Positions 10,987 through 44,977 of a stretch of DNA of 64,000 bases are shown here, one piece after another. The stretch lies in assembly GCA_965644315.1 (NCBI GenBank), contig CBFFRQ010000027.1:26511-90510 (forward strand). The letters are read 5' to 3'. Each line of letters starts with the position of its first letter. Positions within the stretch are counted from its first letter, which is position 1. The stretch is from Caecitellus pseudoparvulus. Lineage: Eukaryota; Protista; Bigyra: Bicosoecida. The notes under the pieces were generated by a model. It was not told where the DNA came from. It did not search any database and saw only the letters and a list, made by a program, of their open reading frames with translations. Both the position numbers and the translations under genes were made by a program.

Positions 10987-11406
10987 TTGCTCCCACCCAC
11001 TCCCTCGCGGAGCAGCGGCCAGGCAGCCACACAGCCTTGCCGGAGCAGCCGTGTGCTGAATTGTGTTCCACGTAAGTTTCTTTATGTTTTCGTTTGTGCA
11101 CTGGGCAGGTGCAGGCACATGGAGCGGCAGCGCGCACGGAAGGAGCCAGCCCCCCTTCATCCAGGCGTGAGCCCCCCCCCCTGCCAAACCACTCCCAGCC
11201 CTGGCCAGGCGGTCGAAACCCCCGTACACGGCACTTCCATCCACCCCAATGCTACTTGCATTCCATTCCTCCCACAACTGCATTGGATGGCCTGAGGCAC
11301 CCATCGCCCTGGCCGAATTCGTCACGCTGCCGAGGCGTGTTGGGCTTACCCCTTTGCACCTTGCAGTGCTCGAGAACGGCGCTCCCTGTGGAACTGGGCA
11401 GTCAGC

Positions 11407-21544: not shown

Positions 21545-21754
21545 CCTGCCCTGTCACGGAAGAAATTCAGGCTGCTGGGAGTACAAATAACGGGCTCCTA
21601 TGTGTCACTTTCCGTGAGCTGCTCAATAATATGGCAGTGGATTTCACCTTTGCCTGGCCACGGACAGTGCGAGCCGGACAGATCTGACAGAGCAGGCAAC
21701 CAAGTACATTTTACAGCCTACACCGAGCCAGGCATTCGCGCAGCGCTAACACTC

Positions 21755-23083: not shown

Positions 23084-23625
23084 GCTGCTCCAGGCTACCT
23101 GCAACGCGTCTGCGCGTGAGAACGGCTGAGGTTGCAGGAGGGGGAGTTGAAAGCCCTGCACGTTGCAGAGCAGTGCATGTCCCCAACTTCCAAGCGAGAC
23201 ACACGCACCTGGGGGAAGTGGGCAGCTTTGCAGCTCTGGCCAGGCGACTGAGCGCCGAAGATCTGGGCTGCAAGGTGCACACGACTGCCTTTGTGAAAAT
23301 AAGAGGCAAGATGGTTAGGTTTTGTATTTTTCGATACTGCCCCGTGTCTGAAATGGACCACCCAAGGACTCGGGCAGCACGCGCGTCCGTCTCACGGTAC
23401 TTTGAGTTAGACTTTTTGTGTGCCGACACCGCTCACGCTCCTTTCAGTCTTGACTAACTTGTCTCAGGCGATATCAATTCCTTTTGCTTCTCCAAGAAGA
23501 GAGCCATAAACGAGCCCCACAATCAGTACCTGCAACGTGCAGGACACTGCTGCACTTGAGCACACCAGTCCACCGCGTCACGGGCAGCGTGTGCGGTAAT
23601 TGCACCTTCCATCGGCATACACACC

Positions 23626-24051
23626 ATGCCGACTGAGACACGCGCGGAGAAGGACATCAAGCTGGGCAAGCTCATGTTCTTTGTGGGGCTCCCAGCTCTG
23701 CCCTGGATGTGGGTGGCGAACCTGCTGTACTTCCGCAAACGATGGGCAGAGGGCAAGCTGCCAGCAGAGGCGATTGGGTGTGCGTTGCACTGCGTCTGCC
23801 CGCACGCCGCCTGCACGGCACGCTGTCACCCCCCCATTTCCACCCACCCAGGGCTCAAGCTCTCCATGGTTGGCGTGCTGGTGTGGGTCATCGCCATCGT
23901 GGCCTGGATCGTGGCGTATCAAGTGGAGCGGCCTTTCCCTGGCCTGGCCGTGTGGGCGCCGCCTCGGTACTGGTTCTGGAACGAGCTGCCGTGGAAGTGG
24001 ACCAGTGGCATCCGGTCAGACTTCTCTTCCCCTGATGAAGCAGTGGCTTGA
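23626..24051 (+). CDS. PSENEN: Gamma-secretase subunit PEN-2; 2 exons
   Basis: KLGKLMFFVGLPALPWMWVANLLYF...WLKLSMVGVLVWVIAIVAWIVAYQ follows the PEN-2 pattern (GG..LP.LW.VN..WF; S..G...W......W...FQ) after removing the stop-free 72-nt intron 23780-23851. Confidence 0.85.
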   Translation: MPTETRAEKDIKLGKLMFFVGLPALPWMWVANLLYFRKRWAEGKLPAEAIGCALHCVCPHAACTARCHPPISTHPGLKLSMVGVLVWVIAIVAWIVAYQVERPFPGLAVWAPPRYWFWNELPWKWTSGIRSDFSSPDEAVA

Positions 24052-24410
24052 GCGGGGCCACGTGCTTGTCCGGCCTTGCTCCAGGAAAGCTTGCCTTGCA
24101 GAGAAGTGGCAGCCACACAGCTGGACAGGCGCAGCAGGCGACTGCCGCTCAAGCGCAGCGGATGTTAATGTCGGCAAGCTCGCGGCCTCCTCTTTATGTC
24201 ATCCGGCGCATGCTGGGCGCTTGGCGCCTGCGGCGGTGCGGGTGCGGAGGCTCGGCATTTGCTCCATCGACGCAAATCATGCTGCCCAGGACTCACCATG
24301 ACGACGCCATGAATGCATGCATGAGTCGAGAGAGGCTTGTGCATTGAGTGCACCACACAGAGTGTGGTGTGACAGCTGCGTGCTGTGCATTCCTGCCGCC
24401 AATCGCAGCC

Positions 24411-27400
24411 ATGCTGCACATGCACCTGACGCCGCTGGAGCGCAAGGCATTTGATCGGGGGGACATGCCACCGCCCAGCTCCCGCATCTGGAAGCGCGGC
24501 GCCTTTGCCGCGACGTTCGGCGATGCTTTTGTGGAAGGTGCGCCTGCCAGCTGCCGAGGCGCGTGTGTGCGCGCTCCCACCTCCTGAACGCCGCGAGCTG
24601 CGCAGGAACTGACCTTGAGGGTGGGCTCATCGCGCCGAGCCTGAAGGTGATGAGCGACACGCTGCATCGAGTCGTGGCGCGGGGCACGGACATGGAGTTA
24701 GATGACAAGACAACTTCCGCCATCCTGTGCTTTGCCTCCAAGTGCGCACGGGGGGCTGGCTTTGACAAGGTGCGCAGTGTCGGCCGCCGCATTTTCCGCA
24801 CCCTGCTCACGGCGTTCTGCATGCTCCTAGCGCAGTGGGACCGCTTTGAAATCCCAGAGTACCTGGAGCGACTGCATGGGTACCTGAAATCGCTGAAGCC
24901 CGGGGACTATGCCGTGCTGCCGGGAGGTACGTGGCGTCCGCACGCTGTCCGCGGCGTGTGTCCGCCTCACCACGCCAACTGCCTCGACCTTGCAGGGTGG
25001 AGAACCGGCGCTGGCGGCCACGCCATCATCAATGTCGTGGAGCGCAACGCAGATGGAAGTGCACGGTTCACCGTGTGCAACTCGGGGCAGGGCTTGGGGC
25101 ACCACCCTCAGTCCACGAAGGCCTTCCCAAGCATGGCTGCGTTGGGCAGCATGTCCCTGGACAACATCCCCTGGAGCCGCGTGGTGGACCCAGGCTTCCT
25201 CTTCTCCCTCGTGAACTTGTTCACCAACAACAGGTCGCACGAGAGCGTCGGGTACTTCTACGACGTGCTCATGCCGCACCTGGCAGGGGAGCCGCTGAAC
25301 ACCGCCGTGGCTCGCACAGAGCAGGTGCAGGATTGGGACACGCCCCAGCGAGCAGGGACGTGCTTTTACCGGTGCTGCCTGGTGGCCCTGCGCTACTGCC
25401 TGCGCCGTGCTGGCCTGACCAAGGTGCAGGTGAAGTCCACGAAGCTGGCCATGCGCGTAGAGTTCATGCGCTGGGCGCTGTTCGACCTGCGCCGGGGCGG
25501 GGATGTGGAGGAGGAGGACCAGGAGGCCATGGAGGAGTGGCGCCGGGGCCTGCTGGACATGTCGGGGGACGGCTCCGGCCCCCGCACCTCCCGCACCGCC
25601 CTGCGCCTGGAGCGTCTGGGCGTCCTGCCCCCACTCCGTGACGCCAAGGGGGGGCAAGAGGGGGAGGAGGGGGGGGGTGCGGCGGAGAGCAAGGAGGGGG
25701 ATGCCGCCCCTGACGTGCCTGCCCCCGTGCCAGGGCTGGAGGTGCCGCACACCCTGGACACCCTGCCCGCCCTGCCCGAGGCGGAGCCGGTGGAGGGGCC
25801 GCTCCTGCTGCCCGAGAGCCAGCTCATCATGCTGGGCATCGCTTGCCAGCAGACGGCCCACGCGGCGCTGAAGCACCGGGAGCGCGAGGGGGGCCTGGAC
25901 GAAGCTGGCCTGCAGCGCATCACGGCCGTCATCGAGGAGGTCAAGGCCGCCATGACCAGCGACAACGTCAAGGTGGTGGGCACCTCCGACGCCCTGCCGC
26001 CCAAGCTGGACCTGCGCACTGTCGCCACGGCCTTCCAGCCCTTCGGCAACATGGACCTGCTGGCCAACACAGAGGACGCCTCGCGCTTCGCAGGCAAGTC
26101 CAAGGGCGAGCTGCCCGACCCTTACGTGGACCTGTGCGAGGGCGCGCCGCCTCTGTACACGCCTGCCGGCCGCCCTGTGCCTGGGCAGTGGGGGGACATG
26201 ATGGCCCTCATGCGCCGCGTACTGCAGCGCTGCCACAAGCTGGAACAGAAGGCGTCCGTCACCTCCGCGCGGACGTCTGCGCACCAACGCCTGGCGCTGG
26301 TGCAGCACGTTATCCTGCACCGCATGCCCGTGCCTGTGGCGTGGACTGCGGAGCGGGCGGCGGCGGACCCGGCAGACGTGGCTGATGCGTGGACCCCCGA
26401 GGAGCTGTCGCTGGAGGACCAGCGGGGCATGCTGGTGTTCCTCTTCCGCCTCATGGCGTACCTCGTGTCCAGCATGAAGTCGGTGTCCTACGAGCGCCTC
26501 ATGGCGGGGGCCCACCTTATCTGCTGCGCCAAGGTCACCGCCATCATCCAGCACGTCGCGTGCCTGGTGCCCAACGTCGACCGCCCCGCTGGTGCCGACG
26601 CTGAAGCGTGCATGGCCCAGGCCAGCCCCGTCACCCAGCTGATGGTGGGCTGTGGCCCAGCGGCGGCGTTCTTGCAGGAGGTGTACGGGGAGGCGGAGGC
26701 GGCTGCCACAGCGGGCCAGGCCAAGGGAGGCCTTGTGCGCGAGGCGGTGGAGTACCACGAGACCAAGCCTGGCGCAGCTGAGGCCGCCCTGGAGTCCAAG
26801 GGTGATGGGGAGGCTTCCGCCTCGGCCAAGGCTGCGAGCAGCAGCGGGGCCGCAGGTGAAGGCGCCGACGGCGATGCCGACGCCGAAGGCGAGAAGGAAG
26901 AGGAGGAGGGGGAGGATGCAGTGGCGGCGGGCCGTGAGGCCGCTGCCACGGCGATCGGCTCCCTGGCCACCCGGGAGTCCGTCGCCATCAAGGGCACTCT
27001 GCCGCCTGTTGCGCCAGTGCACGTGCTGGGGTTCGTCAGCGCCGCCCAGTTCGACCTGGCAGGCATGACAGATACGTGCCTGGTGACGGAGCCGGCGGCT
27101 GCGGTGGCACGCGGCGACCTCATCCGCTACTTCCGTGACACGGAGAAGGGGCAGGTGGTGCGCTTGTTCCACTACAACACCGTCCTGGCCATCACTGAGG
27201 ACGACCCCGTGTTCCTCTTCTCACGCGCCCTGGCCCTGGCCCTGGGCAAGCGCTGGTCCAAGCCCTTCGGGCGGTACCGCATCCCCAAGACCGCCCTGGA
27301 GCGCACCATGATGTGGTTCACCGCGGGATTCGACCAGATGCCCGAGTTTGACATCCTGCGCGACATGGGGCTGCTGATCAAGTTGGTGACCTTCCCTGAC

Positions 27401-30400
27401 CCTTCACGGCGGCTGTTTGGCGGGGAGTTCACCTCCAGCACCTGCACGCCGCAGTGGCACGACTACTTCGACATGATGCCCCTGCCGGGGGGCAAGTGGG
27501 CTGCCGTCATCCGCGTCAGCTGCCTGTCGCGGTCCAACATGCCGCCCTTCCCCATCCCCCCCCACACCCTGGACATGTCCACAGTGTGCGCCTTCGTGGA
27601 GGGCGTGGAGAAGCGCGTCAAGGGCAAGTATGCCGGGCCGGTGGACACCACGAACATGAACTGGGACTACCCCCTCGCCACGGCGGAGACGGTGCGGCAG
27701 GCCAAGGAAGCCGCCTCTCGGACGTCGCCTGGCACGCAGCTGCACCGCCTGGTGTCTGAGGAGGACATCCTGCACGTGAAGCGCCTGCCGTTCGACGGCG
27801 TGCTGTCCCGCCAGGAGTGCGAGGAGCTCATGTGCCTGCTGACGGCGCCGTACGTCCGCATCCCGCTGGTGCTCAACTTCTTCGCCAACAACCGACTGGG
27901 GGCGCTGTTCGACCCCAGCATCCGGCGCCTCATCGAACGCATCCTGTTCGAGCCCCTCGCATACGCGCCAGAGGAGGCGAGCGCCGCGGGGGCAGCAGCG
28001 GGCGAGGCACCCCCCCTGGAAGACGCCCTGAAGACCACCACCATCTCCACCGTGCCGCTGAGGGAGGACATTGACGGCAACGTCGTGCTGCCAGATGGAG
28101 CCGGCAGCAAGCGGCAGACGACGACGGCAGCCAACACCTTCTCAGCCTTCGGCACTCGGTACGGCCTGCTAGCCAATGAGCTGCAGGCACACCCTGGGAA
28201 CGTCGTGCGGCCCATCATTGAGCTGGCGCAGCAAGTGGACGACAACTGCACGGGGTCCTTCACCTCCTCCTTCGTCACCCTGCTCGTGTACATCCTGCGC
28301 CTGGCTGTGGACGTGGAGGGGTTCCTCGTCTTCGTCTGCAAGCACGCCGATGCTATGCCGCTGGGGACCGCCAGCACTGCTGAGGCCAAGCACTGGCTTC
28401 GACAGCTGCGCCTTATTACACGAGGCGTGCTGCTGAAGCGCCTGGAAGGCTACATCAGCGAGGCAGAGGAGTGCGTGGCCAGCGAAGACTCCGGCAGCGG
28501 ACAGAAGTCTGGCAGTGTTCCCCTCCCGCCAAGCGGCGGCGGCAAGCGCCCCGGAGGGCGTGGTGGGCCTGGTAGCACCAGCCGCGCCCTGCTGGCTCTG
28601 TCCCGCTTACACGCGCACCGTGCGCTTGTGTTCAAGCACGGCGGCTTCAACCCCGACGCAGACGAGGTGGCTGTGCCTCTCTCTGCCCCCGAGGCGCTGC
28701 AGCTGCTGTCTTCCATCGCCCAGTGCAACGCCTGGACCACAACGTCCTCCTCCCCCCTCATGGAGAAGGCCCTGTCCAAGACTGCCAAGCTCGACAGCGG
28801 GCGCGGCGGCCCCAGCCACAGAGGCAACAGGGCCGGCTCCACGGCGCCAGTGTTCAAGAAGGGCACACGGGAGGCAGCGTACCCCGAACGAGACGGGCTG
28901 ACGTACTGGGTGCCCATGGCAGCTGTGGCCGCGGTGCTGCAGGCACAGCGTGAGGCAGCCATCCACGCCCTGCAGTCTGCCGCGCTCCCGAGCATCAGCA
29001 GCGCCAGCCGCCAGCTGAATGCCTCCCTGAACGCCATTGTGGCTTGTGCAGCCGGCAAGGCGGCCAGCACCTCCATGCTGTGGAAGCCCGTGTTCAAGAC
29101 CGACCTGCGGTGCAAGCGCGTCATTGAGACGCCACACCCCTGCAGCAACAGCGGCACGCAGCTGTGGCACGTGCACTTCCCCGGCTCCAAGCGCATCGTG
29201 CTGAGCGTGGACAGCAAGTCACGCATGGGGCAAGGGCACTTGACCTTCTTCAAGGACGCCAACTGCAACTCGCACTGGGGCCGGGAGAAGGTCTCAGACA
29301 ACTACGGCAGCGGTGGCAATGGCTTCTACGGTGTGGGGGGCACGCCTCCCCTCATCATCCCCACTGATGAGTTCTACGTCGGGTACATCACGCCACCCGA
29401 GCCCACCCGCCCCCTGCACCTGGCGAAGAAGGAGGAATCGCAAGCCGGCTACAGCACCCAGTACGAGAAGGTGTGGGGCTTCAAGCTCACCATCGAGGCA
29501 TCTGTGGATGCGAGCACGGCTGTGGAGCTGTCCAAGGAGCCGATTCCCGAGGGCGCCGGCACCGCGGGTGACGCTGGGCGCACGTGGCCCCTCGGCTGGG
29601 CGTATGACGCCCTGGCTCGCGCTGGGAACGTCAAGGCAGAGGCTGTGCGCCTGCTGGGGGAGCGCCTGGCGTCGGAGCCGTTGCCGCGGGAAGGGCAGGT
29701 GGACTCGGCAGGCAGCGGGCTGTTCTCCAACCCCAACGGCATGGAGCTGAACCTGCAGACGTGCGAAGTGTACCAAGGCGGCCGCCAGCTGCTGCCAACG
29801 CCACAGACAGTGCGGTCTTCCGAGGAGTACAAGGCAGTGTTCAAGAGCGAGAACCCGCTCTGTGGCGTGCACGAAATTCGCGGCCAGTGCTCGACGTACT
29901 CGCTGGACAGCGGCAAGCACACGTACTTCATGACCGAGTGGAAGACGGCACAGGCTCCCACACACGAGCTGGTGCGCAGCGGCCCCGACATCGCCCCTGC
30001 CATCGACAAGCTCAGCGCTCCAGAGTCCGAGGCAGGAGCAGCCATGCAGCGCGCCAGCTCCCAGTCTGTGCTGCATGGCCTGGAGGTGATCAACCTGCAC
30101 CACTCCAGCCGGATGTCGGCTCCCGCCTTTGGCACTGCAGATGAAGATGAAGCAGGCAGCTTCCTGCGCAACCTGCCTGACCTGCCGGCCGATTCGGAGG
30201 ATGCGCTGAGGGCGGCGGTGTCTGCCCGCACTTCTGCGGACGAGGAGCGGTACCGCGTGTCCAAGACACCTGTGGACGCGCTGGATGTCAGCACCATGAA
30301 GGAGCTGCAACAAGACGCCGCCGTGACGGACAGTGAGGTGTACTACGGCTGCCCCCGTGTGGTGGAGGGTGTGCTGCAGTGGCAAGGCGAAGCGTACAGT

Positions 30401-33400
30401 GAAGCGTACCGCCGACAGAGCTGTGGCTGGGTGAGCGACGTGCTGGAGAAGTGTGAGGACCTGCCAGACACGATGAAGGGCGACGCTTGGGTGTCCCTGG
30501 TCATCCGGCACCCAGAGGGGCTGGCTGAGAAGGTCAAGGCGCACTATGAGTCCTTCGACGCGAGCTCCCAGTCAGGCAGCGTGTCGCTGCCTGGAGCCCG
30601 GGATGAGGACGAGGTGCTGGGGCGCATGCTGCTGACGAAGACGCTGTCGTCTGACTACCACTACGACTACCGGTCAGAGACGGGGGACGACGAGGGCGGC
30701 ACCAGCACAGGCCCGCCTGACTTCTGGATGGAGATCCAAATCATGCGGTACCGCAAGGAGGTGCGCATCTTCGTCCTGAGGGAGCTCGCCCGCAGGGCCA
30801 CGCGGTCCTTCGTCTTCTCCACGGATGGCCGCTACGCCAACAAGTTCTACCTGTCCACCCTGCTGAACGCCCGTGCCTTCCCGTGGTTGAAGAATGCCCG
30901 CTTCGCCTCGTGCAACTCATCCGAGTCGTACGCTGACCGACACTACTACGGCGGCAGTCCTGACGTTGTCATTACACGGCGCTTGCAAGCGTCTCGAGAT
31001 GCAGAGGAAGGTGCAGACGAGGACTCCACCCAGGAGGATGACGACGACGCTGCCAGTGGCGCGGGCAGCTCAGACAGCGAGGGCGAAGGCGCGGGCAGCT
31101 CCGGCGCGTCGTCAGACCCAAGCTCCCTGGCCATGTCCATCCTCGCGTCTCAGGAGGAGACCTTCCTGCCACCCACCGTGCTGTCCTCCCTGCTTCCTGA
31201 CGGCATTTGCAGTCAGTACGACTTCTGGCTGTCGGGGAAACCCTCGGGCACCAGGGAGGTCGTCAGCTTCCGAGGGTACCCTAGATCTTTCCGCGCCGGC
31301 CGCACATTCCTGGAATTGGATTTGAAGCGCGTGCCCCGCCTGTCTGATGGAAAAGAGACCTTGCAGTGGGAGGCATGGGTGCGGCGGTTCACCCTTGCCG
31401 CGTCCACCCACAGACGGACCGCCTCAGGCGCTGCTGCGGGTGACGGCGACAGCGAACCCACCATCCGCATCGCAAAGATCGAGCTGCTCCTGGACGCCTC
31501 CCGTGCCGCCGTGGGCAGCACGCTGGAGAAGATCGCTTCGGTCATGCTGCGCATGGAGGGCCTGTCGGACACGTTGTTCTGGTCCGAACTGCCTGTTCCG
31601 TCTGAGGACGCGTGGACGTTCAAGCAGCCAGACGGCACGCTGGCAGTGCCGCCTTGCGAGGTGCAGCCTGGCGCAGACGTCGCCGTGAGCAAGGTGGAGG
31701 TGCTCTCCCTCGGATGCAGCTTCACGCCCAAGGGTGCGTCTGCCTGGCTGCAGTCCCGCCGCGCCGAGACGCTGGGCGACCACGCCTCAGGCGTGCGCCT
31801 CATGAGCGACGACTTCGACGGGCTGTACGTCAGCGACGCGCGGTCCTCCGAGCTGGCCCGGCACTTGCACGGCATGCCCTTCGCCATCGTGCTGGAGAAC
31901 GAGCAGCTGGAGCAGTTCATCATGGCGCCCAACTACCCCGTCGTGAACACCAAGGTGAGTCGGGGCTCCCCCTTCTCCACGGAAATCACCGCCACCCGAG
32001 ACCCAGACTGGCGGAGGTCGGTGAACACGCGGTACTACCTGTACGCGCTGCACCGTTCAGGCGCCTTCTTGACGTGCCCCTCCGTGGGTGCCGCGTTCTA
32101 CCTCGTCCGGCTCGCGATGTATGCTCGGGACTACCGTCGGGCCAGCGAGCTGCTGCGCGCCGCGTACAAGGACTCGTCCATGACTGGCGAGGAGCAGTTC
32201 ATGTTCAACGCCCTGCTGCAGTGCAGCGGCGACCAGCACCCGGATGCACATGCGCTGCGTCTGCACTGCGCCCTGATCGGCAACGCCTCCGGCATCTTCG
32301 ACTCCCTGAAAGAAGTGCGCCTCATCGGCAGCAAGCAGGGCCACCGCAACGTGGGGCGCAGCGTCAGGGGCTCAGGTGCCCGCGAGTGGCAGCGAGTGAT
32401 TGAGAACGACCTCGGGTCGTACATGGCCAAAGAAGACCACGTCGGCTTCTACGCAACCCTGACCCCTGTGCAGTTGCAAGAGCTGGGGCGTGCGGCGTGT
32501 CTCAGCGGCGCCGCCCTCATTCCTTACTTGGCTGCGGCAGTGGACTGCGGGCCCTCCCAGTCAGCCGACGTGGTGCCGCCGCCACCCTCTGGCTCCCTGC
32601 GCTTGGAGCGCCTGCCATCGCGCCTCGCCGCCACTGACGAAGGCGGACAGCTGGTGCGGCTGTACAAGGCCGTGAGCAGCAGCTCCATGTGCATGGGCAC
32701 AGCTGGCCTCGTGAAGCCCCACTTGCCCAAACCTGGCCGGTACTACATGCATGTGGCCTTTGCCAAGGCCAAGCACATGGAGTTGACAGCCAGTAAGGCT
32801 AGCGAGCTGCCACCCGGGGCGACACTGAAGTTCTTCCTGGACGCGGAGTTCACAAAGCAGGTGGGCCCCGAGTACTCAGGCTCAGCCATGGTGGTGGACA
32901 AGGAGACGAACCCCAACCTCAAGGGCCGGATGCAGTTCTCGGAGCACTCCTGGCGCCAAGGGCAGCGTGTCGTGTTCAAGCCCAACTGGTCGGGCGTCAA
33001 GGGGGAGCGCCCCGTGACCCTCTTCACAGACTCTGTGTATGTCGTCATGGACTACTTGCCGGAGGGCTGTGACAAAGATGCAGTGCTGGCAGGCGACCCC
33101 ATCGATGCCTCCGCCCAAACGGACAGCACTGCTCAGCACTTCACTGGAGTGGTGCAGGCGGGCCTCAAAGCCATTGACACCTCCGAGATCCAGCGTGGGG
33201 ACGAGGACCTCCCCTACACCTTCGACCTTCGCTTCACTGCAGTGGCGCCTGTCTCTGCCGTGCCGTGGGGCCCCAGCGTCGAGGCGGGCATGGCGGAACT
33301 GAAGGCATTGAGGGAGCGCCACGCACAGGACACCACTGAAGCCGGCAAGGGCTCCCCTCCACCGTCTGTCAGCTGGTGGCGGGACGAGGACATGATCTTG

Positions 33401-36400
33401 AAGGACCCCGACGGGCATTACGTCAAGTTGGATCTGATTGCGCAGGCTGAAGAGAGCATCACGGACTCGAACCTCTTCGCCATGCTGCATTCCTGCTTGT
33501 CAACGCTGCGCCCACGAGCGGACGGCGTCTTTTTGTCAGAGCTGTACCACGTCCTGCCCTTCCCCGGGGACTTCTCCTCCGGTCAGCGCGACTGGACACC
33601 GACTGTCACCAACGCGCTCAGTGACGCGACGTACCTGGGGCAGGCCTACATCGGCTTCTTCCTGCCTCTCTACTGCATGCTGGTCGGCCAACACCGCCTG
33701 GACATCTTCCGCGAGACGGAGACGGAGACGGAGCGACGGAAGGAGGAAGTGACGAGGAAGGCCGCCGCGGCAGCCGCTGAGAAGTGGGACATGGAAGAGG
33801 CGGAGCGCCGAAAGCGAGCTGCAGAGGCCAGTACAGAGGGTGACAGCGGGGCGCAGACCGAGGACGCTGCTGAGGCGGCAGAGTTTGCCCTCGGCGGCGG
33901 AGCCGCGGCTGCAGTCGTGGAGGATACCACGCCTCAGCCTTCCCGCGCACGCGAGGCCGCCATCGAAGCAGCTGTGACAGCGGCCCAAGAAGAGCTGGGC
34001 GCCGAGATGCTGCATGAGATGCGCCAGTTCGGCAACCCTGCTCCAGGCACTGCGACGCTGGTGAAACTCATGGCGGCAAGCATGATGGATGCTCTGGAGA
34101 GGTCCAACATGCACTCGCACAATTCGACGCTGGCGTCGCTGCAGGACCGGCGCATGGCGGTGGCGATCCTGCTCCTGTTCGCCGTCGCGGCAGAGCACGA
34201 CGCGCAGTACGGCGACGCCGTCAAGTTGACGGCTGCACTGCCGGAGTTGCCGCTGTCGCACGCTGCGGCCGTGAGGATGGTGTACGAGGATGCGGGCGTG
34301 CTGAAGCCCACGACGGCTGCTGGGATCGCCCTGCGCGAGGAGCTGGACCGCAAGATCGAAATGGTCAAGGCGTCGAGGCCGGCACTGGCTTCTGCGCGAA
34401 CGCTGCGGCACCTGAAGAACCCCTTCCGACGGGGGCGCGTCAAGTCGTCTCAGTCGCACAACCGACGTGGCGATGAGGGCGTGCTGAAGCAGACCGACGA
34501 CATTTTCCAGCGCGTGTTCGAGAAGAAGATTTTCCGTGCTGCCGCCATGATCGCCTCCTCCTCATACTTGCGCTTCAAGTACCTGCGCGAGCCCACACCC
34601 ATGTACGTCATGATCGAGGGGGCGCTTTCGCACCACGTGCGCATCCAGCCGCGGCATATTCACCCCCAGAAACAACCGAAAGCGTCCAACTACCAGCGGA
34701 GGGCGTTCTCGCTTCCCACGACTGACGTGTCCAGGGAGGTGGTGGAGACGCTGAGCCAGCCTCTCTCTGACTGCGCTGCGTTCGTGGAGGCTGAGAGCGA
34801 GGCAGCAGCAGTTGCTTCGGAGGCCGCTTCTGCAGCACTGTCACTCGACAGCCTGCCGTTTGAAGTGCGCCACCTGTCCGTGGCACACTCGCACTCTGGC
34901 CAGCAGTTCCTGGAGCGCATGGAGGGCGATCTGCAGCGCAGCAGGGGCAAGTCCTCTGCCGCTGCTACACTGAAGGCACTGACCTCCGCCACCGTGGGCC
35001 ACATGAAGGCCGCTCTGTCCTCAGCGCTCTCACAGGGCAGCTTGGCGGACCTGGATGCCGACAGCCTGCGCGCCTTGGGCCCCCAGGCCACCGAGGTTGT
35101 CGCAGGCCTGGCTGAGTTCTCGCGACACCTGCACGGCGTGCTGCACTCCTCTCAAGCTGCTACCTGGTCCGAAGCCGAGCGCCTGTACACCGACGCCAAC
35201 TCGGAAAACGTCGCCGGCACGCCCAGCACGTCAGACGCAGTGCTGTTCAGAGCTCGGCGACTCTCTGGCGTGCAGCCCATCGCAAGCCTGCTGCACGTCA
35301 TGGGCAGCGTGCTGTCCACTGCTGGCGAGGCAGACTTGCAAGACTGCAACTCCTTCATCGGCCCAGACGAGTCGGACTCGCTCTTCGAGCGAGCTGCGTT
35401 GCTGATGATGCAGTCGGTACGGGCGAGCCAGGCGGCATCTGCCATGATGGAGGTGACTGGTCTGCTGAAGAAGCTGCAGGGGTGCTTCGTGGAGGCCTTG
35501 CAGTCTCTGCTTGTGCAGCCGCACCCCGGCTCTGCATCCGCGACCACAGCCCTCCTCCCGTCCGGCGCAGAGCTGGCGGCACTGTACCGCACTGGCTTTG
35601 ACTTTGTGCAAGCGCACGCCCTGTGCATGCAGGCTGCAACCGCCGTGCGTTCAGCCGTGGACACGCTGGCGGCAGCAGCTTCCGTGTCCTCCGAGGATGC
35701 CTTGCAGGCACTGCACCTGCACATGGCTGTCGGCACTTTCATGCTGGACTTTGACACAGACAAGCTGCTGCAAGACGTTGCCAGCGGCGCCGTCCAGAAG
35801 CTACTTGACTGCTTGCCGTCAGTGCGCGCTGGGTGCTGTGTGGAGGGGCAAGCGGTGCAGGCACATGTGCACCGCGAGGAGCCCAGCGTGGTCAGCGAGC
35901 GCCGTGTGGCAGTGACGCTGGACACGCTGTCCTCCAGCTCTGCCGCTGCCGCGCGCCGTCTTCGTCAGCAACGGCACTTCTTGGAGCAGAGCGACTCGGC
36001 CATTGCCTTCGACCCTCGCTTCCTGGCCTTTGAGTTTGTGCTGGGCCTTGTGCTGCGCAAGCGCCAGGTGGAGCTGGTGGAGGACTTCTACGCGGCTGCC
36101 ATGGCAGGCAAGTCCTCTGTGCACCAGATGCTCATGGGTATGGGCAAGACCAGCGTCATTTCGCCGCTGCTGGTGCTGATGCTGGCAGACGGGCAGAGCT
36201 TGGTGACGCAGGTGGTGCCCGACGCCCTCTTGCACCAGACACAGGATGTGCTGCGGGCGCGCTTCAGCTCCATCATGCAGATCCAGATTTCCACCCTGGC
36301 CTTTGAGCGGTCCGACCCTGCGTTGGACACCGTGGACAAGCTGGAAGGCCTGCTGGACAGGGTCAACCGTGTGCGCCTGGACGGCGGCGTGATGGTGACG

Positions 36401-39400
36401 ACGCCCGCTTCCCTGAAGAGCATGATGCTGCAGTACTTGGACTACTTGCAGAGTGTGCAGGCCAGTCAGAAGATGCTGGAGGTGTCACCCGGCGACCCGG
36501 CAGTGGAGGGCAAACTGAAGCTGTTCATGAACGCCCGCACGTCCCGCAGCAAGGAGCTGAAGGCGGACGTGCTGCGGGACATCATGCGCATGTGGGGGCC
36601 CGCCACCCGCGGCCGCCTGTTGATGGACGAGGTGGACCTCATTTTGAACCCCCTCAAGTCGGAGTTGAACTTCCCCATCGGCGCCAAGGTGCCGCTGGAC
36701 TTTAGCCCCTGGCGCTGGGAGTTCGCCATGCACCTCATGGACGCGGTGTTCTATGCGAGCGGGGAGAAGCTGACGCCCGGCGCGACGGGGCACGACATGC
36801 CCATCACCATCACCGCCGAGGGCATCCTGGATAAGCTGCGCGCGTGTGTGGACGAAGGCACGCGCCAGCTGGCCATCCAGCGCAAGCCTCACCTGCTCAT
36901 TCTCCAGGAAGACTTCTTCAACACGCACCTGCGGCCGCTGATGGCGCAGTGGTCTGCTGTGTGGTTCAACTACCACGCTGACGAGTTCCACACACCAGGC
37001 GCCCCTGTCGCTGAGGCTGACTCTGCTGCCTTCATGATGTGCGACTTCACAGTCCCAGAGGGCTTGGCGGAACGCGTCGTGGCGGGCTGCACGCCCATGG
37101 GCATGCAGGCGCTGAACTTGATCCGGGACTGGATGAACTCGTTGCTGTTCTTCTGCCTGTCCAAGGTGCACCGTGTGTCCTTCGGCGTGCTGCAGCAGCG
37201 CGACATGCACCGCCTGCGAACGCAGCACACCTCCTCCTCCACCACGCCGTCCCGCATGCTGAACGCTGTGCCCTTCGTCGGCAAGGACTCCCCCAGCCCC
37301 GCCTCGGAGTTCGCACACCCTGACGTGCTGGTGGGGTTGACGGTGCTGAGCTTCCGCTACTCCGGCCTCCGTGGCTCAGACGTCGCCAAGCTCGTCACGC
37401 AGCTCAAGAAGGACCTGTCCAGTGAGCCGGGCCCCTTCGAGTCTCGCAAGTCATACCAGCTGTTCGCAAAGTGGACCTCCCTCGCCGCCGAGTCCGCCTC
37501 GGCAGGCAACTCCGCAGAGGTCTTGCCCCTGCACCTGGCCCAGCCGGCGGACCTTTCCCAGCTGAGTGGCATGACTGCGGCCATCTCGAAGATCCCTCAA
37601 GCCATCCTGTACTTCCTGCGCGTGAAGGTGTTCCCAGACACCATGCAGCACCAGCAGGTGAAGCTTACAGCCAGCGGTGTAGACTTGGGCTCGGACATGC
37701 TCTTCCACACCCGCCTGGGCTTCTCTGGCACACCATCAGACCTGCTCCCCATCGGCCTGCCATCGTGCCATTACGAGCTGGGCTCCGACGCAGCCATGGT
37801 GCGGCAGCTGGTGCGTGAGGACGTCGTCACGCCTCTCTGCCTGCCTTCTGACTGGTCGGTCAAGAGCGTGCTGAAGATGGTCGCCACGTGCACAGCGCCA
37901 GAGTACAATGCGCTCATTGACACGGGTGCCGTGGTGACGGGGCTGTCCAACTTGGCCGTGGCCAAGTTCCTCCTCAAGCACGGCCTGGACAGCAAGCAGG
38001 GCTGCGTGTACCTGAACAGCAAGGACGAGAAGATGGTATTCCTGCGAGATATGGCGACATCAGTGCCTCTGTCCCAGTGTGGCCTGGCCAAGGAGAAACT
38101 CTTCGTCTTCTTCGACCAAGTGCACACGACAGGCATGGACATTCCGCAAGCTGTCAATGCCCGTGCCTGTGCCACGCTGGGCAAGGACATGACCCTGCGG
38201 GACTACGCCCAAGGCTGCTGGCGCATGCGAGGGCTGGGCAAGGGGCAGACACTCACCGTGGCTCTCACGCCGGAGGTGGTGGAGCTGGTCCACGGCGTGA
38301 CGCCTGCCTTGGAGGATGGGCGCATGCCTGGCGACTTTGGCATGCCAGCGGCCATCCTCGCCTTCCTCGTCTCCAACTCCATGCGAGCCGAGCAGCTGCA
38401 GCACGTCGCGCTGGTGGAGCAGAACCTCTCGTACACGTGGCGCAAGCCTGCCTTTGTGGACCTGCTGAATTCTGCCAGCCCGGACGACGAGAACGCAGGG
38501 CTCGTGGCGCAGCCTGATGCGCTGCGCCTGCTCCTGGACGCCGGCGCCGCTGGCACCACCAAGCGCCGTCGGCTGAAGGAAGACAAGAAGATGGACGTGG
38601 AAGCAGAGATGCTGGACCAGACTACGTACGCGTTGGGATACGCTGCCGACTTGATGGAGGAGGCTGCGGACGATGCCATCGTGGATGCGGGCGCCGATTC
38701 CCACCGCAAGGTGGATGTCACGGCAGCTGACAAGCTGGCCACGTTTGACGCTTTTGTGCTGTCCAGGTATGGGCACGAGCGCAAACCCGAGCAGCCCATG
38801 GGCACTGGCATGCCCCTGCACCCGCCTGGCATGGGCGGCGGCGCGGCAGGTGGCGGCACGCTGTCAGCCCCAGGGTTCACCCCCGGCCTGTCACGGGCGC
38901 AGTCCATGGGTGGCGCAGCGGGCGACAGTGATGTGCCCCCTCCTCCTGCGCCTGCGATGGCGCCGCTGGTGCGGGCAGCCTCCCTGGGCTCGCCGACCCC
39001 TGCAGGAGGGGGCGCCACGCCGTCTTTGGAGGAGGACCTGAAGCCTGGTAGCTTGCACCCGCACTGGCTGAGCATGTGTGTGAAGGCCTTCCGAGACCCG
39101 CTGAACTTGCACTTGGCGTCGGACGTCCAGCAGCCAAAAGGCTTCACCGCCACACTGCTGGAAAAAAAGGAGCGGCGGCACTTGTTCATCGCGCACACCC
39201 CCGGCGCGGAGGAGGCCGCTGCCCACATGCTGGTGCTGGCGGCCAAGACCACTGGCTTGGCGTCGTCGGACGGCGTGGCTGCCTCTGACGCTGACGGAGC
39301 CCAGTTGACGCCGGAGCAGGAGACTGCTGCACTGGCCGTGCGTCGCGCGCTGCAGGGTGTGCAGGTGCTGGAAATTGAGAAAATGAAGGACGAAGAGAAG

Positions 39401-42400
39401 GAGAAGCAGAAGCAGCAGGAGAAGGAAATCGCCCGGCTGCTGGATGCAGACTTGGGCCTGGAGCTGCCTTTCCGTGTCATTGACTTCCTCGTGCACCCTG
39501 CTCGCCACCGGGAGGTGGGGCGGGGCCGCACATTCTACCCTCTCCGGGAGCTGGAGCTGGGCGGAGGACTGGAGGGTGCGGAGGAGGGGGATGCGCCTGC
39601 GACGAAGCACTCCCTCGCCTTCCCAAGCAGCGTCTGGGTGTCGGAGAACCACACAAATGAGACGAGCTTCTCCCGCTGCCGCCTGAAGAATGGCGGCCTG
39701 GCCCTGGTGTGGCGCCTGCCCGCCTCGCCGCTGTCTGAAGAGCAGTACCTGGCCCTGAACTCTGTGGAGGAGGAGCGGCAGGCGCAGAAGGAGGGCGTGA
39801 ACAAGCACGAGTTCGCCGACGGGCGGGAGGATGTCCTGGCAGCCAGGGCAAAGGCTGCCCGGGAGGCGGCTGACAAGGCGCCCAGCGCGCCGGCGCCTGC
39901 TGAGGCGCCTGTGGACCTGTCGCAGACAGAGTTCCTGGCGCAGGTGACACTGGCCGAGGCCGAGACGCTGCGGCGTGCGGTGCACACACGCCACCCCGCC
40001 TTGTCTCAAGCCGCGACTGGCTCAGCTGCAACAGTGGCGGTGGTGGCTGTGGATGGATGGGGGCTGGACTGGGCGCCGAGTGACACGGCAGCGGCCGACG
40101 CAGGCGAACCTCTGCAAGTCGCCGAGCAAGCCGCGACCGGACAGGTCTCGGCAGTGCCGGATTCTTTGCAAGTGGGTGCCAGTGCGCTGCAGTTCTACAA
40201 CTGCAACGTCTGGTACAGCGTGCAAGACCTGGCTGACCACTTGCTGCAGTGGACTGCAGAGTGCTCCCCCGAAGCGCTGGCGGGATTTTTCACACAGTGT
40301 GCTGCACTGCGCACGCGTGACCGCCGGGCGTTTTCTGGCACAGTCTTGGAGCCGATAATGGCCAAGAAGCCGAAGGACGACCTTGTCGCGGCCAGCAAAC
40401 TGGTGAAGCAAGCCACAACTGCCCTCATTGCAGCCCACGGCAGCGTCGCTGGCGCCGTGCTTAGCATGGTGGGCGACGGCAGCGAGACGGTCAAGCGGTC
40501 CGTTGTGCTGGGGGCGGTGCAGAGCGAAATCGACGCCTCTGGGCTGGATGAAGCAGCCACCCTCAGCGTGCTGTGGGGTGCCAACGAAGTGGAACTGGCG
40601 CCGGCCCTCGTCACGGCACACTTGCTGCACCTGTCTGCGCCGCGAAGCCGTTTGTTCAGAGCTGTGCTGTGTGCCGCGTCCGGCAAGCCGATGGCGAAGG
40701 AGATCGCTGGCTTGCACGCGGACGAGCTGACGAAACTCAGCGCAGACATGCCCGCCGAGGCGGACCTCTCCCTTGCAAACGCCGAGGTTGGGGATGAAGT
40801 CGTCGGCTCTGTGGATGCCGCAGCGGCTCTGGAGGCAGCAAAGCACGCACGCACCGTGCGTCGTGCTGACGCCACCTGTGGCAAGTACCTCCCCCCTGAC
40901 CAACCGTGGGTGCTGCATTCAGGGGACAGTGTCTTCATTTCCTCGGAAGGCTTCGTGTCGAGCGACCCTGCCGCAGACAACGGAGACAGCAAGCTAGCGC
41001 ACGTGGGACAGGCTGCCACAGCAGTTGTGGGGCACTCCCCCCTGTACAGCGGCGCGCATTACTACGAGTGTGTCCTGTCCCAGAACGGGCATGAAGTGCT
41101 TCACACGCTTCGGGAGGTGCACTTGGAGGTGACCCGCGCCCGGCGTCTCGCGCTGCAGGACGCCAAGAGCAAGAAAGAAGCCCAAGAAGGCGCGCCGAGC
41201 GGCACGCCGATCGGGGGGGATGCAAAAGAGGCCGACGGTGGTTCGGCTGCGGGCGTCGAGGACGGGCGCATCTTCACCGGCAGGCAGCAGCGGGCTGGTG
41301 GCTGGAAGGACGCACCGACAAAACCCGAGCCCAGCAGCACAGGCGTCGGGTGGCTGGCCAACGAGGACCAGCTCCTCGTCCTGCGCGGCGACGGCAAGGT
41401 GGCCTGTGGCGACGAGATCCTGGCCGATGCAGGCCGCGCTCTCAAGCTCGGCGACGTCGTGGGTGTGACTGCTGACTTGGGCAAGGGGCAGGTCGTGTTT
41501 TACCTCAACCACAAGTCTGTCGCTTATGTGGCGTTGGCCGACATTGAGGGCCTGGCAGGCTCCACTGACGCCCCTGTGGGCCTGCGGCCAGCGGTGCGTG
41601 TGAATGCGCACACGGCATGGCATGTCTTCCTCGGCAGCAAGGGGTGGTCGGAAGCCACCACTGCCTTGCTCATGGCCGAGTCGGGCTACCTGTCGGCTGC
41701 ACCAGCCTTCAAGGCCAGCCTCTTCTCGGTGTTCATGTCTGCTCAGCAAACCATCCCCGGCTTTGCCAACGTGCTGGAGTCCAAGGCCGGCGAGGAAGAG
41801 GAGGCGGGGTCTGGCGTGCTGCCGACCAACCACGCACCAGTCAGCGCCACCCTCCAGTGGCGTGAGGAGATGCAGGAGTTGCTGCGCAGTGGCGCCCGCG
41901 CCGGCAAGCTCGTGGAGCTGCGCGACCGCTCTGTCATCAAGGAGTACACGGCAGAGACGTCCAGCACGGACTACTCTTACTACTGCACCCTGGCTGGCTT
42001 GACCTTCAGCAGCGGGAAGTACTTGTTCGAGTTTTCGTTCGACAAGGGCGCTCAGGGTGCCCTGGGCTTCCGCACGGCCCCCTTCAGGTTCAGCGCCAAC
42101 CAGCAGAAGGGTCTGCACGACAACGCCGCCTTTGGCATCGACGGCATGACGCCCTCGTGCTCCAACCACTGGATGGGGGAGCTCTTCGTCAAGCGAGGCA
42201 TGGCCCACCAAGGCGAGCGCTGGAAGACTGACGTCACTTACTCCATTGCCGTGGACATGGATGTCGGCACCGTGTGGTACGGTGTGGACGGCAAGTGGAC
42301 TCTCCCGAATGGCCCTGCATACCGCCACATCCGAGAGGTGGCGGCGTCAGGCTTGAACATGGCAGTGCACCTGTATGCGTCCTCTCGCTGCAAGATTAAC

Positions 42401-42550
42401 GTGGGGCAGAGCCCGTTCAAGTGCGACGCGCCCCAGCCAGGCTTCCAGCCTCTACTCGCCTGGTTCTCAGAGCGGCTGGAGCTCCTGAACAAGGTGAAGG
42501 AAAGCGCAGCCGCCACAGCAGGTGCTCCTGCTGCGGAGGCAGCGCAATGA
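24411..42550 (+). CDS. Giant (~5,980 aa) protein: putative Cys-protease domain, two CUB-like domains, UBA-like segment, DUF3638/DUF3645 SF2-like P-loop ATPase, two SPRY domains
   Basis: Exons 24411-24537, 24606-24769, 24836-24926 and 24996-42550; the start is uncertain. Motifs VLPGGW...GGHA...CNSGQG...PQRAGTC; HQMLMGMGKT; LLMDEVD; AVPFVGKDSPSPASEFAHPDV; LGFSGT; ALIDTGA; FFDQVHTTGMDI; QGCWRMR. SPRY motifs GDVVGVTADLGKGQVVFYLN and SGKYLFEF...IAVDMDVGTVWYGVDG...INVGQSPF. Confidence 0.88.
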
Positions 42551-43033: not shown

Positions 43034-44977
43034 ATGGGCATCAAGTTCACGAGTTGCATGCTGGCCCTGCTGTGCGTGCCGGGGGTTTTCCTGCAGTGGT
43101 CCACCCTGCTGGCCATACAGCGCGCGAAAGCCAGCGTGGGGGTCAACGCGAGCCAGCCAATCCTCGCGGGTTCCCCCGTCCTTTACGGCCGCAGCAGCCC
43201 TGCTGTGGAGACAGCGATGCTCTTCAGCGTGTTCGGGGACGGCACTAGCATGGCGCTTGTCTCGGTGAGTGCTCGAGTGTGAGGCAACTGCTTTGGGCGC
43301 TGCGCATGCAGCAGCACCTGCCACGGGCCACATCCGCAGGGCACGCTCTCGCTCGGAGTCTTTCTTGCGTTGTCCGCCTGCGTTGTCCCATCGTGGCGCC
43401 GGGTGGGCCTCTTCGCTGTGCTGTTGTGGGGCGTCGTGCTGGGCATGGCGGCCTGTTTGTACACTTGGATTCCACAAATGTTGTTAACGAACGGAGAGCA
43501 AGGCCACATTATCCGCCTCACCTTGATTCCCCTGGCAGTGCTCCCATTCGCCGCCTCCTCGCCATTCGTGTTGAAGGAGACACGGCACCTGCTTTTCTCT
43601 AAGCCGTTCCTCGCTTGCATCGTGTTCTTTTCGACTGCTGCAGGGTGCGGCGCTCTGCTCACAGGAGTAATATTTCGAATCTTTTACGCTTCGTCAGATC
43701 TTGAGCGGGTGGCCATTCGTGTTTTCCTGCTTCCGATCCTCGGGGAAGTCGCGCAGGCCGTGGGTCGCTTCGTTTTCTCGTACTGGGGCGCAGACTCCCT
43801 GCCTGCCAGCTTCGTCACGTACTTGCTTGGACCCATCACTTTCACCATTGCAGTGACGGGGCGCATCTTCACGAGCGCCCTGTCATCAGTCGGCGCGACA
43901 GTCATGCTGGCAGTCGCTGTGTCGGTGGTTGAAGTCGTCATGCGGCTGACTGTCATCCCACGAGACGATGCGTACCGCTGGTGCGCGGCCCGCTTGCCAT
44001 GTTGTAGCATGGCACTGCGGGATGGGTCTACCAAGGCAGTGGCCCAGCGCAGGCGGGAGATGATTGGGTACTTCCACTTCCTGTCTGTGGACACGCTGGC
44101 GGAGGACGTCGCCATCTTGCTCGTGCTGCCCATGGCAGCGTTCTTCAGGTCCCCCTTATTTGCAGGAGGCCCCCCTGTCTCCCTCTCAGATACGCTGCTT
44201 AGAGTTGCACTGCAGTGGCTCCTGGAGTTGGCGACCGATGCGACCCCGTTCCTGCTCTACGCTTGCCTGCGCACTCTTGGCTCGGGGTGCGTGCCGTATG
44301 TCCCGGTCAGTCACATGGAGCTCCGGCAGCAGCGCAGCATTTCTGTGGTTAAAGAACAAGGCAGTGCTAAGGGTCAGATTGGGCACGAGGGGCTCACCCA
44401 TTCCGCTGCGTTCATCGACGACGCGGAGGGGGAAGCGGACCAGAATCCCCTTGCAGGCTATGGGGCTGGAACTCCGATGCACTCCCTGCCAACCCCGGCA
44501 GGTGCCATTGCAGGAGCTGCTGGAGACTTCCCGCTTGAGCACGAGTCCTTACAAGGAATGGCCAGCCCCTCACCACAGAGTGCGGGCGCTGAGACTGACC
44601 CTGCCACTGCCCACGTGCGAGCAGTGCAGGCTGCGATCCAGCTCCACCATGAAGCTGCCGCGCAAGGTGAGGGTGCTGGAGTGTGGGACCGATTAGAGCT
44701 GTCCAGCCTGCGTGCGGCAATGGGTATTTCCACGGCGTATTGGCAGTCCATGGGGGCAACTCGGCGCATGCTGTGGTGGTTGACTGCGACATCGGATTCC
44801 ATGGCTGGCCGCGTCGCAGCAGCTTGGCACCAACGGGATTCGAAGTGGGCACTTGTCACGGCTGGGTGGATTGTGAGTCTTGGCCTGTTCATCGTCCACG
44901 AACTGTACTATGCAGGGACGCACTGCATCTACACCGACCCGGCAGGCGCTCCGTACGCCGACCTGTGCGAACTGTAG
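43034..44977 (+). CDS. Multi-pass membrane protein of unknown function
   Basis: Exon from MGIKFTSCML (an in-frame ATG at 42938 is an alternative), intron 43265-43339, then a long exon with eight or more hydrophobic helices and a polar loop before a last helix. Confidence 0.72.

What the first reader, a model, noticed from the sequence alone, without database searches (positions are those of the whole stretch)
24411..42550. 6,000-aa protease / SF2-like ATPase / SPRY giant: candidate single-chain sensor-motor-effector system
Seen: one chain carries (i) an N-terminal His...Asn...Gln-x4-Cys module; (ii) two CUB-like beta domains (IETPHPC at ~29120 and a second at ~32700-33250); (iii) a UBA-like segment (~29580-29670); (iv) a full set of helicase-like motifs, namely Walker A QMLMGMGKT (36125-36151), Walker B DEVD (36626), GFSGT, TTGMDI and QGCWRMR; and (v) two C-terminal SPRY domains. 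Established: the DUF3638/DUF3645 core has no known function; SPRY domains are target-recognition modules; the ExPHP-type CUB-like domain occurs in giant E3 ligases. Inference: an ATP-driven, ubiquitin-linked machine that binds targets via SPRY, translocates or unfolds them and cleaves or deconjugates them. It may be a protist cell-autonomous defence factor analogous in logic, not homology, to RNF213 or ZNFX1. This is the best candidate for an undescribed system in the window.
Basis: partly seen in the sequence, partly recalled or inferred. Interest (0 to 1): 0.8.

Follow-up and report, generated by a model that had tools for sequence, protein, structure and literature searches.

The report
Giant protease-plus-motor protein of protists
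This 6,000-residue protein joins a cysteine-protease-like domain, shaped like two Legionella effector domains, to an ATP-driven helicase-type motor; the same pairing occurs in many protists and in giant viruses, and I found no paper that has studied it.

Summary
In detail: one gene of about 6,001 aa (ATG 24411, two short predicted introns) whose strain differences are mostly silent. It belongs to the uncharacterised DUF3638/DUF3645 family and is not unique. One paralog exists in the genome; 16 of 127 sampled proteins (Thecamonas, Bigelowiella, Chlorarachnion) share catalytic Cys + CUB + SPRY. New here: (1) the core folds as a two-lobe superfamily-2 ATPase (pLDDT 91; SecA, FANCM, INO80 tie at Z 16-17) with invariant, SecA-like motifs; (2) the N-terminal domain folds like the cysteine-protease-like domains of Legionella AnkH and LegA15/AnkD (Z 15-16), and only weakly like CE-clan ubiquitin-like proteases (Z about 5); (3) giant viruses (Hokovirus, Fadolivirus) keep both protease triad and motor; (4) most protist members lost the Cys but kept the motor. 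Best reading: an ATP-driven protein-remodelling machine tied to ubiquitin signals (0.45). A defence role is plausible for the wider family but unsupported for this two-copy, conserved gene. No activity is shown; AnkH showed no protease activity in vitro and LegA15 was reported as a GTPase. The scan also noted the motif set on another piece of this genome (s1-668923).

The parts
24411..24537 (+). Exon 1, with the start codon (42 codons plus 1 nt)
   Evidence: Sequence; same start and junction in the 98% identical gene model P0121; the paralog is similar just upstream of the TDLEGG motif
24538..24605 (+). Predicted intron 1, 68 nt, GT-AG
   Evidence: P0121 translation skips it; no RNA junction seen
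24927..24995 (+). Predicted intron 2, 69 nt, in frame and without a stop
   Evidence: GT-AG ends coincide with a 23-aa insertion absent from at least 5 of 6 aligned relatives; pLDDT under 50 there; no RNA junction seen
24996..42550 (+). Main exon to the stop codon; whole product about 6,001 aa. Further small in-frame introns are not excluded
   Evidence: marine metatranscriptome contigs at mostly 95-99% identity lie on 25095-29953 or a little beyond (presence only)
24608..25501 (+). Cysteine-protease-like domain of AnkH/LegA15 type; His 25019, Asn 25079, Gln 25346, Cys 25361
   Evidence: AlphaFold pLDDT 83.5; AnkH 6mca Z 16.2, rmsd 3.0 over 209 aa; AnkD 7ew8 Z 15.3
26033..28504 (+). Conserved scaffold region of unknown fold (aa 527-1350)
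   Evidence: Three blocks found in 114-117 of 120 protist relatives, none in the viral or DUF6606-type sets; no Pfam hit
29111..29524 (+). CUB-like domain 1 (ExPHP type)
29588..29677 (+). UBA-like helical segment (weak)
   Evidence: Orthologous segments give weak UBA_7, UBA, EF-Ts_N and CBL-UBA hits
30710..32494 (+). Second conserved region of unknown fold (aa 2086-2680)
   Evidence: 117 of 120 protist relatives; Atlas search uninformative
32711..33259 (+). CUB-like domain 2 (profile match over 32711-32932)
   Evidence: E 7.5e-10 to the CUB1 family profile
35957..38464 (+). Superfamily-2 ATPase core with two RecA-like lobes and a helical insertion; holds DUF3638 and DUF3645 (37247-37342)
   Evidence: pLDDT 90.8, pTM 0.89; Foldseek best hit SecA 5eul E 2.5e-5; VIA Z 17.0 SecA, 16.8 FANCM, 16.3 INO80; motif counts
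41018..41671 (+). SPRY domain 1
   Evidence: Pfam PF00622 E 1e-6; family profile
41981..42475 (+). SPRY domain 2
   Evidence: Family profile; matches the paralog's second SPRY at E 6e-12

Best explanation
A soluble, ATP-driven protein-remodelling machine linked to ubiquitin or ubiquitin-like signals. Shown by prediction and conservation: an intact superfamily-2 motor and an N-terminal cysteine-hydrolase fold with His-Asn-Cys plus Gln sit on one scaffold, and this pair is the unit shared with giant viruses. Inferred: SPRY, CUB and UBA-like domains select a substrate; the motor grips and moves polypeptide as SecA does; the N-terminal domain cuts a peptide or isopeptide bond (removes a modifier, or processes the substrate or itself) where its Cys is kept, and acts as a binding module where it is lost. 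In this organism it most likely does steady, low-copy cellular work.
For: Core fold: (SecA gives the longest alignment, 398 residues). Motifs resemble E. coli SecA more than DinG or RecG: DEVD/DEVD, GFSGT/GMTGT, GMDI/RGTDI; the DUF6606-type sister group has MGEGKT and RGTDL. GKT/S in 120 of 120, DEVD 118, GFSGT 120. Protease fold and motifs match AnkH's published patterns rGHa, D/NRg, GNC (PMC6712400); weaker matches to XopD, NEDD8 protease, RavZ, OtDUB. Accessory domains of relatives, hand count: UBA about 50 of 120, RanBP-type zinc finger about 22, plus Ubl, PUB, AZUL, MIB-HERC2, WWE, ZZ; a RING follows the domain in P0259. No nuclease or dedicated nucleic-acid-binding domain is common there. 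One marginal hydrophobic stretch only.
Against: SecA, FANCM and INO80 tie in the structure search (Z 17.0, 16.8, 16.3) and profile tests against E. coli SecA were not significant, so a protein substrate is not shown. CE-clan proteases match only at Z 4-5. AnkH had no detectable protease activity in vitro (PMC6712400); LegA15 was reported as a GTPase using the same Cys (PMC9757750). 84 of 113 proteins with the domain lack the Cys motif, so cleavage is not the family's core job. The UBA call in this protein is weak.
Confidence: 0.45

Rival explanations
1. A nucleic-acid motor or sensor: the core tracks on RNA or DNA (RIG-I, DinG or FANCM-like) and switches on the N-terminal cysteine hydrolase, the reverse of ZNFX1's helicase-plus-ligase logic.
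For: Most superfamily-2 ATPases act on nucleic acids (established knowledge). FANCM Z 16.8, INO80 16.3, DRH-1 15.2; DinG, LGP2 and MDA5 among the top Foldseek hits; the weak profile match to DinG (P 0.004) beats SecA.
Against: Motifs II, III and V have SecA's pattern, not DinG's or RecG's. Accessory domains in relatives are protein- and ubiquitin-binding types.
Confidence: 0.22
2. A cell-autonomous defence factor of protists against intracellular bacteria or giant viruses, with SPRY domains as pathogen sensors.
For: Giant viruses carry the pair, four copies in Hokovirus. The protease fold is shared with Legionella effectors. The DUF6606-type sister group shows many copies in bdelloid rotifers, Hydra and a sponge, and occurs in mosses and fungi. 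Accessory domains are shuffled between members. SPRY domains are the least conserved parts (19-40% against 44-52% for the motor). A DUF3638 gene is among the most polymorphic predicted effectors of Plasmodiophora (10.64898/2026.10.14.759018).
Against: Only two copies in this genome; mostly silent strain differences in the 5' 5.9 kb; oomycete members form one clade with short branches; no induction data. SPRY domains diverge fast in housekeeping proteins too (own knowledge).
Confidence: 0.2
3. The N-terminal domain is not a protease but a nucleotide-binding switch, as reported for LegA15, which regulates the motor.
For: LegA15 7xql (with GTP analogue) matches at Z 14.9; its GTPase activity needs Gln356 and Cys361, which have the same spacing as Gln298 and Cys303 (PMC9757750). 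A basic residue three positions after the Cys is kept in 59 of 60 members, and the domain persists when the Cys is lost.
Against: By sequence spacing, the positions of LegA15 Arg291 and Lys367 hold Thr/Ser and mostly Leu here (no residue-level superposition was available). His and Asn, nearly dispensable for LegA15's GTPase, accompany the Cys in 22 of 24 virus-type proteins that keep it, as expected of a protease triad.
Confidence: 0.1
4. Artefact: a chance open frame in GC-rich DNA or an assembly chimera.
For: GC is 65% and long spurious frames abound on the other strand.
Against: Full-length colinear paralog and relatives; one contig of another run spans 24300-30200; synonymous bias.
Confidence: 0.01

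Closest known systems
DUF3638/DUF3645 family (Pfam PF12340, PF12359; UniRef automatic name 'ubiquitinyl hydrolase 1')
   Same: Both domains above the curated cut-off; 37-52% identity over the core to the 120 best of 261 long relatives.
   Different: The family has no described fold or function in the papers found (6 mention DUF3638, all in passing in the four I read). No OTU or UCH catalytic Pfam domain appears in any hit list, so the automatic name has no visible basis in those domains. This member belongs to the subfamily with intact Cys, CUB and a SPRY tail.
Cysteine-protease-like domain of Legionella AnkH (6mca) and LegA15/AnkD (7ew8, 7kj6, 7xql)
   Same: Same fold over about 210 residues (Z 15-16, rmsd 3.0-3.4); His...Asn/Asp...G-x-C order and local motifs.
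   Different: About 15% identity, undetectable by profile search; here fused to a motor, not to ankyrin repeats; LegA15's GTP-contacting basic residues are apparently absent.
CE-clan ubiquitin-like proteases (XopD, SENP8, RavZ, OtDUB, CidB, I7L)
   Same: His, Asn/Asp, Gln, Cys order; partial fold match over 133-178 residues.
   Different: Only Z 4.4-5.2; substrate unknown.
SecA translocation ATPase
   Same: Two-lobe fold, top structural rank, similar motifs I, II, III and V.
   Different: No significant sequence-profile match; rmsd 4-5; motif VI differs (QxxxRMR); embedded in a 6,000-aa eukaryotic chain; no SecY-type partner known.
RNF213 and ZNFX1
   Same: Giant single chain coupling an ATPase to a ubiquitin-system enzyme.
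   Different: RNF213 has an AAA core and ZNFX1 an SF1 helicase, both with E3 ligase activity (abstracts); here an SF2 motor with a predicted hydrolase and no ligase domain. Analogy only.
p97/Cdc48 with its OTU deubiquitinase and UBA/NZF cofactors (own knowledge)
   Same: Logic of an ATP-driven extractor plus a deconjugating enzyme plus ubiquitin-binding adaptors.
   Different: Multi-subunit AAA ring there; a single-chain SF2 motor here.

Membership tests
DUF3638/DUF3645 family | PF12340 and PF12359 above curated cut-offs | tested here: met
   113.5 bits against 31; 48.2 against 25
Superfamily-2 helicase-like ATPases | Two RecA-like lobes | tested here: met
   Model pLDDT 90.8; the 50 listed VIA hits are helicase-type ATPases at Z 12.8-17.0
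Superfamily-2 helicase-like ATPases | Motifs I, II, III, V, VI intact and conserved | tested here: met
Superfamily-2 helicase-like ATPases | ATP hydrolysis | not testable with these tools
   Needs a biochemical assay
SecA family | Sequence-profile match to SecA | tested here: not met
   no significant match
SecA family | Structure closer to SecA than to other SF2 families | tested here: inconclusive
   Z 17.0 SecA against 16.8 FANCM and 16.3 INO80; best Foldseek E-values are for SecA
SecA family | Polypeptide translocation through SecYEG | not testable with these tools
   Not expected for a cytosolic protist protein
AnkH/LegA15 cysteine-protease-like domain | Fold | tested here: met
   Z 16.2 and 15.3; next best 7.4
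AnkH/LegA15 cysteine-protease-like domain | Motifs rGHa, D/NRg, G-x-C in order | tested here: met
   GGHA, NSG, GTC in the window protein; published patterns in PMC6712400
LegA15-type atypical GTPase | Basic residues equivalent to Arg291 and Lys367 | tested here: not met
   Thr/Ser and mostly Leu at the same spacing; judged by spacing, not by superposition
CE-clan ubiquitin-like proteases | His-Asp/Asn-Gln-Cys order on the CE fold | tested here: inconclusive
   Order met; fold matches only Z 4.4-5.2
CE-clan ubiquitin-like proteases | Cleavage after a ubiquitin-like C-terminus | not testable with these tools
   Needs activity probes
OTU or USP deubiquitinases (implied by the UniRef name) | OTU or UCH catalytic domain | tested here: not met
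   No such Pfam hit in the window protein or in the hit lists; no OTU fold among the listed structural matches
RNF213/ZNFX1-type immune ATPase-E3 ligases | E3 ligase domain with an AAA or SF1 core | tested here: not met
   SF2 core; no RING, HECT or RZ-type hit in the window protein
Arms-race defence genes | Copy-number expansion or excess amino-acid change | tested here: not met
   Two copies; 30 synonymous to 8 non-synonymous in the 5' part; SPRY region not sampled
DUF6606 (PF20255) as a decayed form of the same N-terminal domain | Profile-profile homology | tested here: inconclusive
   Colinear, P 0.0017, probability 15.6%; reversed control P 0.36

The most novel reading that the evidence does not exclude
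DUF3638/DUF3645 proteins are an undescribed class of single-chain machines in which a SecA-like motor threads polypeptide into an AnkH-type cysteine hydrolase, used on both sides of the conflict between protists and their giant viruses or intracellular bacteria; this gene is the SPRY-armed host version.
Probability: 0.2. Interest if true: 0.88.

Novelty: new variant of a known kind. Interest (0 to 1): 0.6.

Why it matters
It gives the first concrete, testable anatomy that I could find for a large eukaryotic family that databases auto-label as a ubiquitin hydrolase without a visible catalytic basis. It links that family to the Legionella core effector AnkH, whose protease-like domain has no known substrate, and to giant viruses, whose 2,000-2,900-residue versions are a compact form for biochemistry. 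If the motor moves polypeptide, it would be a SecA-like protein translocase outside secretion. The window gene itself is an ordinary member of an old subfamily; the interest is at family level.

Tried and rejected
Sequence searches of solved structures with the core, the N-terminal domain and a deeper protist-virus-DUF6606 profile found nothing significant; only fold comparison worked. Profile comparisons with E. coli SecA, DinG and RecG did not separate them. Pfam has no family for the N-terminal domain. The Atlas search of the middle region was uninformative. The bacterial-genome scan gave one 9.9-kb, 65% GC contig in a metagenome-assembled genome, probably eukaryotic contamination; its patterns were tuned to protist members, so bacterial relatives are not excluded. 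RNA evidence is contigs only, with no junction, level or strand. Contexts of the two closest relatives could not be fetched (too long). The organism was not identified. The tree is a fast one and its root on the viral protein is unsure, so the order of events is not claimed. Rejected: chance ORF; uniqueness of the architecture; expansion in this genome; membership of OTU/USP or RNF213/ZNFX1 families.

Full report
Observation. The + strand holds one open frame of 6,031 codons at 24455-42550; residue numbers here count from 24455. The genome is a 30.6-Mb eukaryote in 215 contigs with short GT-AG introns. The start at 24411 lies in a 127-nt first exon. Intron 1 (24538-24605) is also used by a 98% identical public gene model. 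A second, in-frame intron (24927-24995) matches a 23-residue insertion missing from relatives and is disordered in the model. The product is about 6,001 aa. Neither junction was seen in RNA. Contigs from two marine metatranscriptomes lie on the coding part, mostly at 95-99% identity, which shows presence and not expression level. Among 39 listed strain differences, 30 are silent and 8 change an amino acid. Pfam finds DUF3638, DUF3645 and SPRY. Family profiles confirm two CUB-like and two SPRY domains. The CUB call is supported through relatives; the UBA-like segment is only weakly supported.

Family. The genome has exactly one paralog, 6,719 codons on contig 18, colinear over protease, CUB, motor and SPRY regions. 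A search with the core returned 261 long relatives from oomycetes, Thecamonas, Bigelowiella, Bodo, Pelomyxa, Hondaea and many unnamed protists. They share the scaffold blocks (114-117 of 120) but differ in accessory domains: UBA (about 50 of 120 by hand count), RanBP-type zinc fingers (about 22), thioredoxin, EF-hand, SPRY, Ubl, PUB, AZUL, MIB-HERC2, WWE. The motor motifs are almost invariant. The N-terminal domain is detected in 113 of 127 sampled proteins, yet 84 of these lack the catalytic Cys motif. Sixteen proteins, including this one, its paralog and members from Thecamonas, Bigelowiella and Chlorarachnion, combine intact Cys, CUB and SPRY. The architecture is therefore old and shared, not a local invention.

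The core. AlphaFold gives a confident model (pLDDT 90.8, pTM 0.89). Foldseek ranks SecA first, then DinG and RIG-I-like helicases. The wide search ties SecA (Z 17.0, up to 398 aligned residues), FANCM (16.8) and INO80 (16.3). The core is thus a superfamily-2 ATPase. Its motifs II, III and V follow SecA's pattern, most clearly in the DUF6606-type sister group, but profile tests against SecA are not significant. 'SecA-like' is a lead, not membership.

The N-terminal domain. The model (pLDDT 83.5) matches Legionella AnkH (Z 16.2, rmsd 3.0, 209 residues) and LegA15/AnkD (Z 15.3), far above the next hit (7.4); CE-clan proteases XopD, SENP8, RavZ and OtDUB follow at Z 4.7-5.2. AnkH's published motifs match ours; its triad is needed for function, but no protease activity was detected in vitro (PMC6712400). 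LegA15 was reported to be a GTPase using the same Gln and Cys (PMC9757750). By spacing, its GTP-contacting Arg291 and Lys367 are not kept here, while His and Asn travel with the Cys. A hydrolase role is more likely than a GTPase role, and the substrate is unknown.

Wider range. A 408-kb, 20% GC viral contig encodes a 2,691-aa relative. Searching with it found 31 proteins of 1,850-2,900 aa; the named ones are from Hokovirus, Hyperionvirus and Fadolivirus, and the viral fold library adds Harvfovirus and Yasminevirus, with four copies in Hokovirus. Most of the 31 are unnamed, so their viral origin is inferred. Twenty-two keep His, Asn and Gln-x-x-Gly-x-Cys, and nearly all keep the motor motifs. 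The protist scaffold blocks were not detected in them, and Pfam lists no CUB, UBA or SPRY. Protease plus motor is therefore the conserved unit. A sister group with DUF6606 at the N-terminus is abundant in bdelloid rotifers, Hydra, a sponge, mosses and fungi; DUF6606 may be a decayed version of the same domain (P 0.0017; inconclusive).

Mechanism. Shown: the fold and conservation of both enzymatic modules, and their stable pairing. Inferred: substrate capture by SPRY, CUB and UBA-like domains; ATP-driven movement of polypeptide; cleavage or deconjugation where the Cys survives. Because the motor is kept in every member of the core-selected set and the Cys often is not, the motor is probably the family's main activity (the set was found by searching with the core, which favours this). 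I give 0.45 to a ubiquitin-linked protein remodeller, 0.22 to a nucleic-acid motor, 0.2 to a primary defence role and 0.1 to a LegA15-like nucleotide switch; the role and substrate questions overlap. For defence speak the viral copies, the effector fold, the expansions in the sister group and a polymorphic DUF3638 effector candidate in Plasmodiophora (10.64898/2026.10.14.759018). Against it, for this gene: two copies, mostly silent variation, and a short-branched oomycete clade.

What is known. Six papers in the library mention DUF3638 and two DUF3645; the four I read do so in passing, and a 2025 Tetrahymena study calls its mechanism undefined (PMC12615304). None of the family's other database identifiers gave a relevant paper. 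Subscription journals are largely missing from the library, so prior description is not excluded. UniRef names many members 'ubiquitinyl hydrolase 1', though no OTU or UCH domain is present in any hit list.

Verdict. Real, and a member of a known but uncharacterised family. The window gene is not special within its subfamily. The family-level anatomy (AnkH-type protease fold plus SF2 motor, shared by protists and giant viruses) appears undescribed and is directly testable. Interest 0.6.

Noticed in passing
window 47960-63943 (+): A second giant open frame (5,327 codons) with C-type lectin, ALK/LTK glycine-rich, fibronectin-III, Ig-like and ephrin-receptor-like domains: probably a surface protein, unrelated to the finding.
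   Followed up: partly
L010:5330-13405 (IMG/VR contig of 408,141 bp): Giant-virus family member with an intact motor and a decayed N-terminal domain; the contig length equals that of the contig carrying Hokovirus_3_18, so it is probably Hokovirus.
   Followed up: yes
L011 (GCA_905221625, 5.9-kb contig): The 'Symbiodinium sp. KB8' assembly holds a contig 97-98% identical to window 20525-25630, and also a protein of a Cafeteria cluster: signs of contamination of that assembly by heterotrophic protists.
   Followed up: partly
L009 (PABI01000099.1): A contig filed under an Anaerolineaceae metagenome-assembled genome carries a protist-type family member at 40% identity and 65% GC; likely eukaryotic contamination.
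   Followed up: partly
window about 23627-24030 (+): A small spliced gene just upstream that looks like the gamma-secretase subunit PEN-2 (read from the sequence; identification from memory).
   Followed up: no
window 19589-21553 (-): Pex14-like protein with a Pex14 N-terminal domain, a PUB-like domain and a weak KPWE domain.
   Followed up: no
window 11296-15090 (+): Ankyrin-repeat protein of about 1,230 aa.
   Followed up: no
window 43283-44977 (+): A multi-pass membrane-like protein without a Pfam match, directly downstream.
   Followed up: no
L012:10001-22671: Cafeteria roenbergensis has a more divergent 4,139-aa member with intact Cys and no CUB or SPRY.
   Followed up: partly
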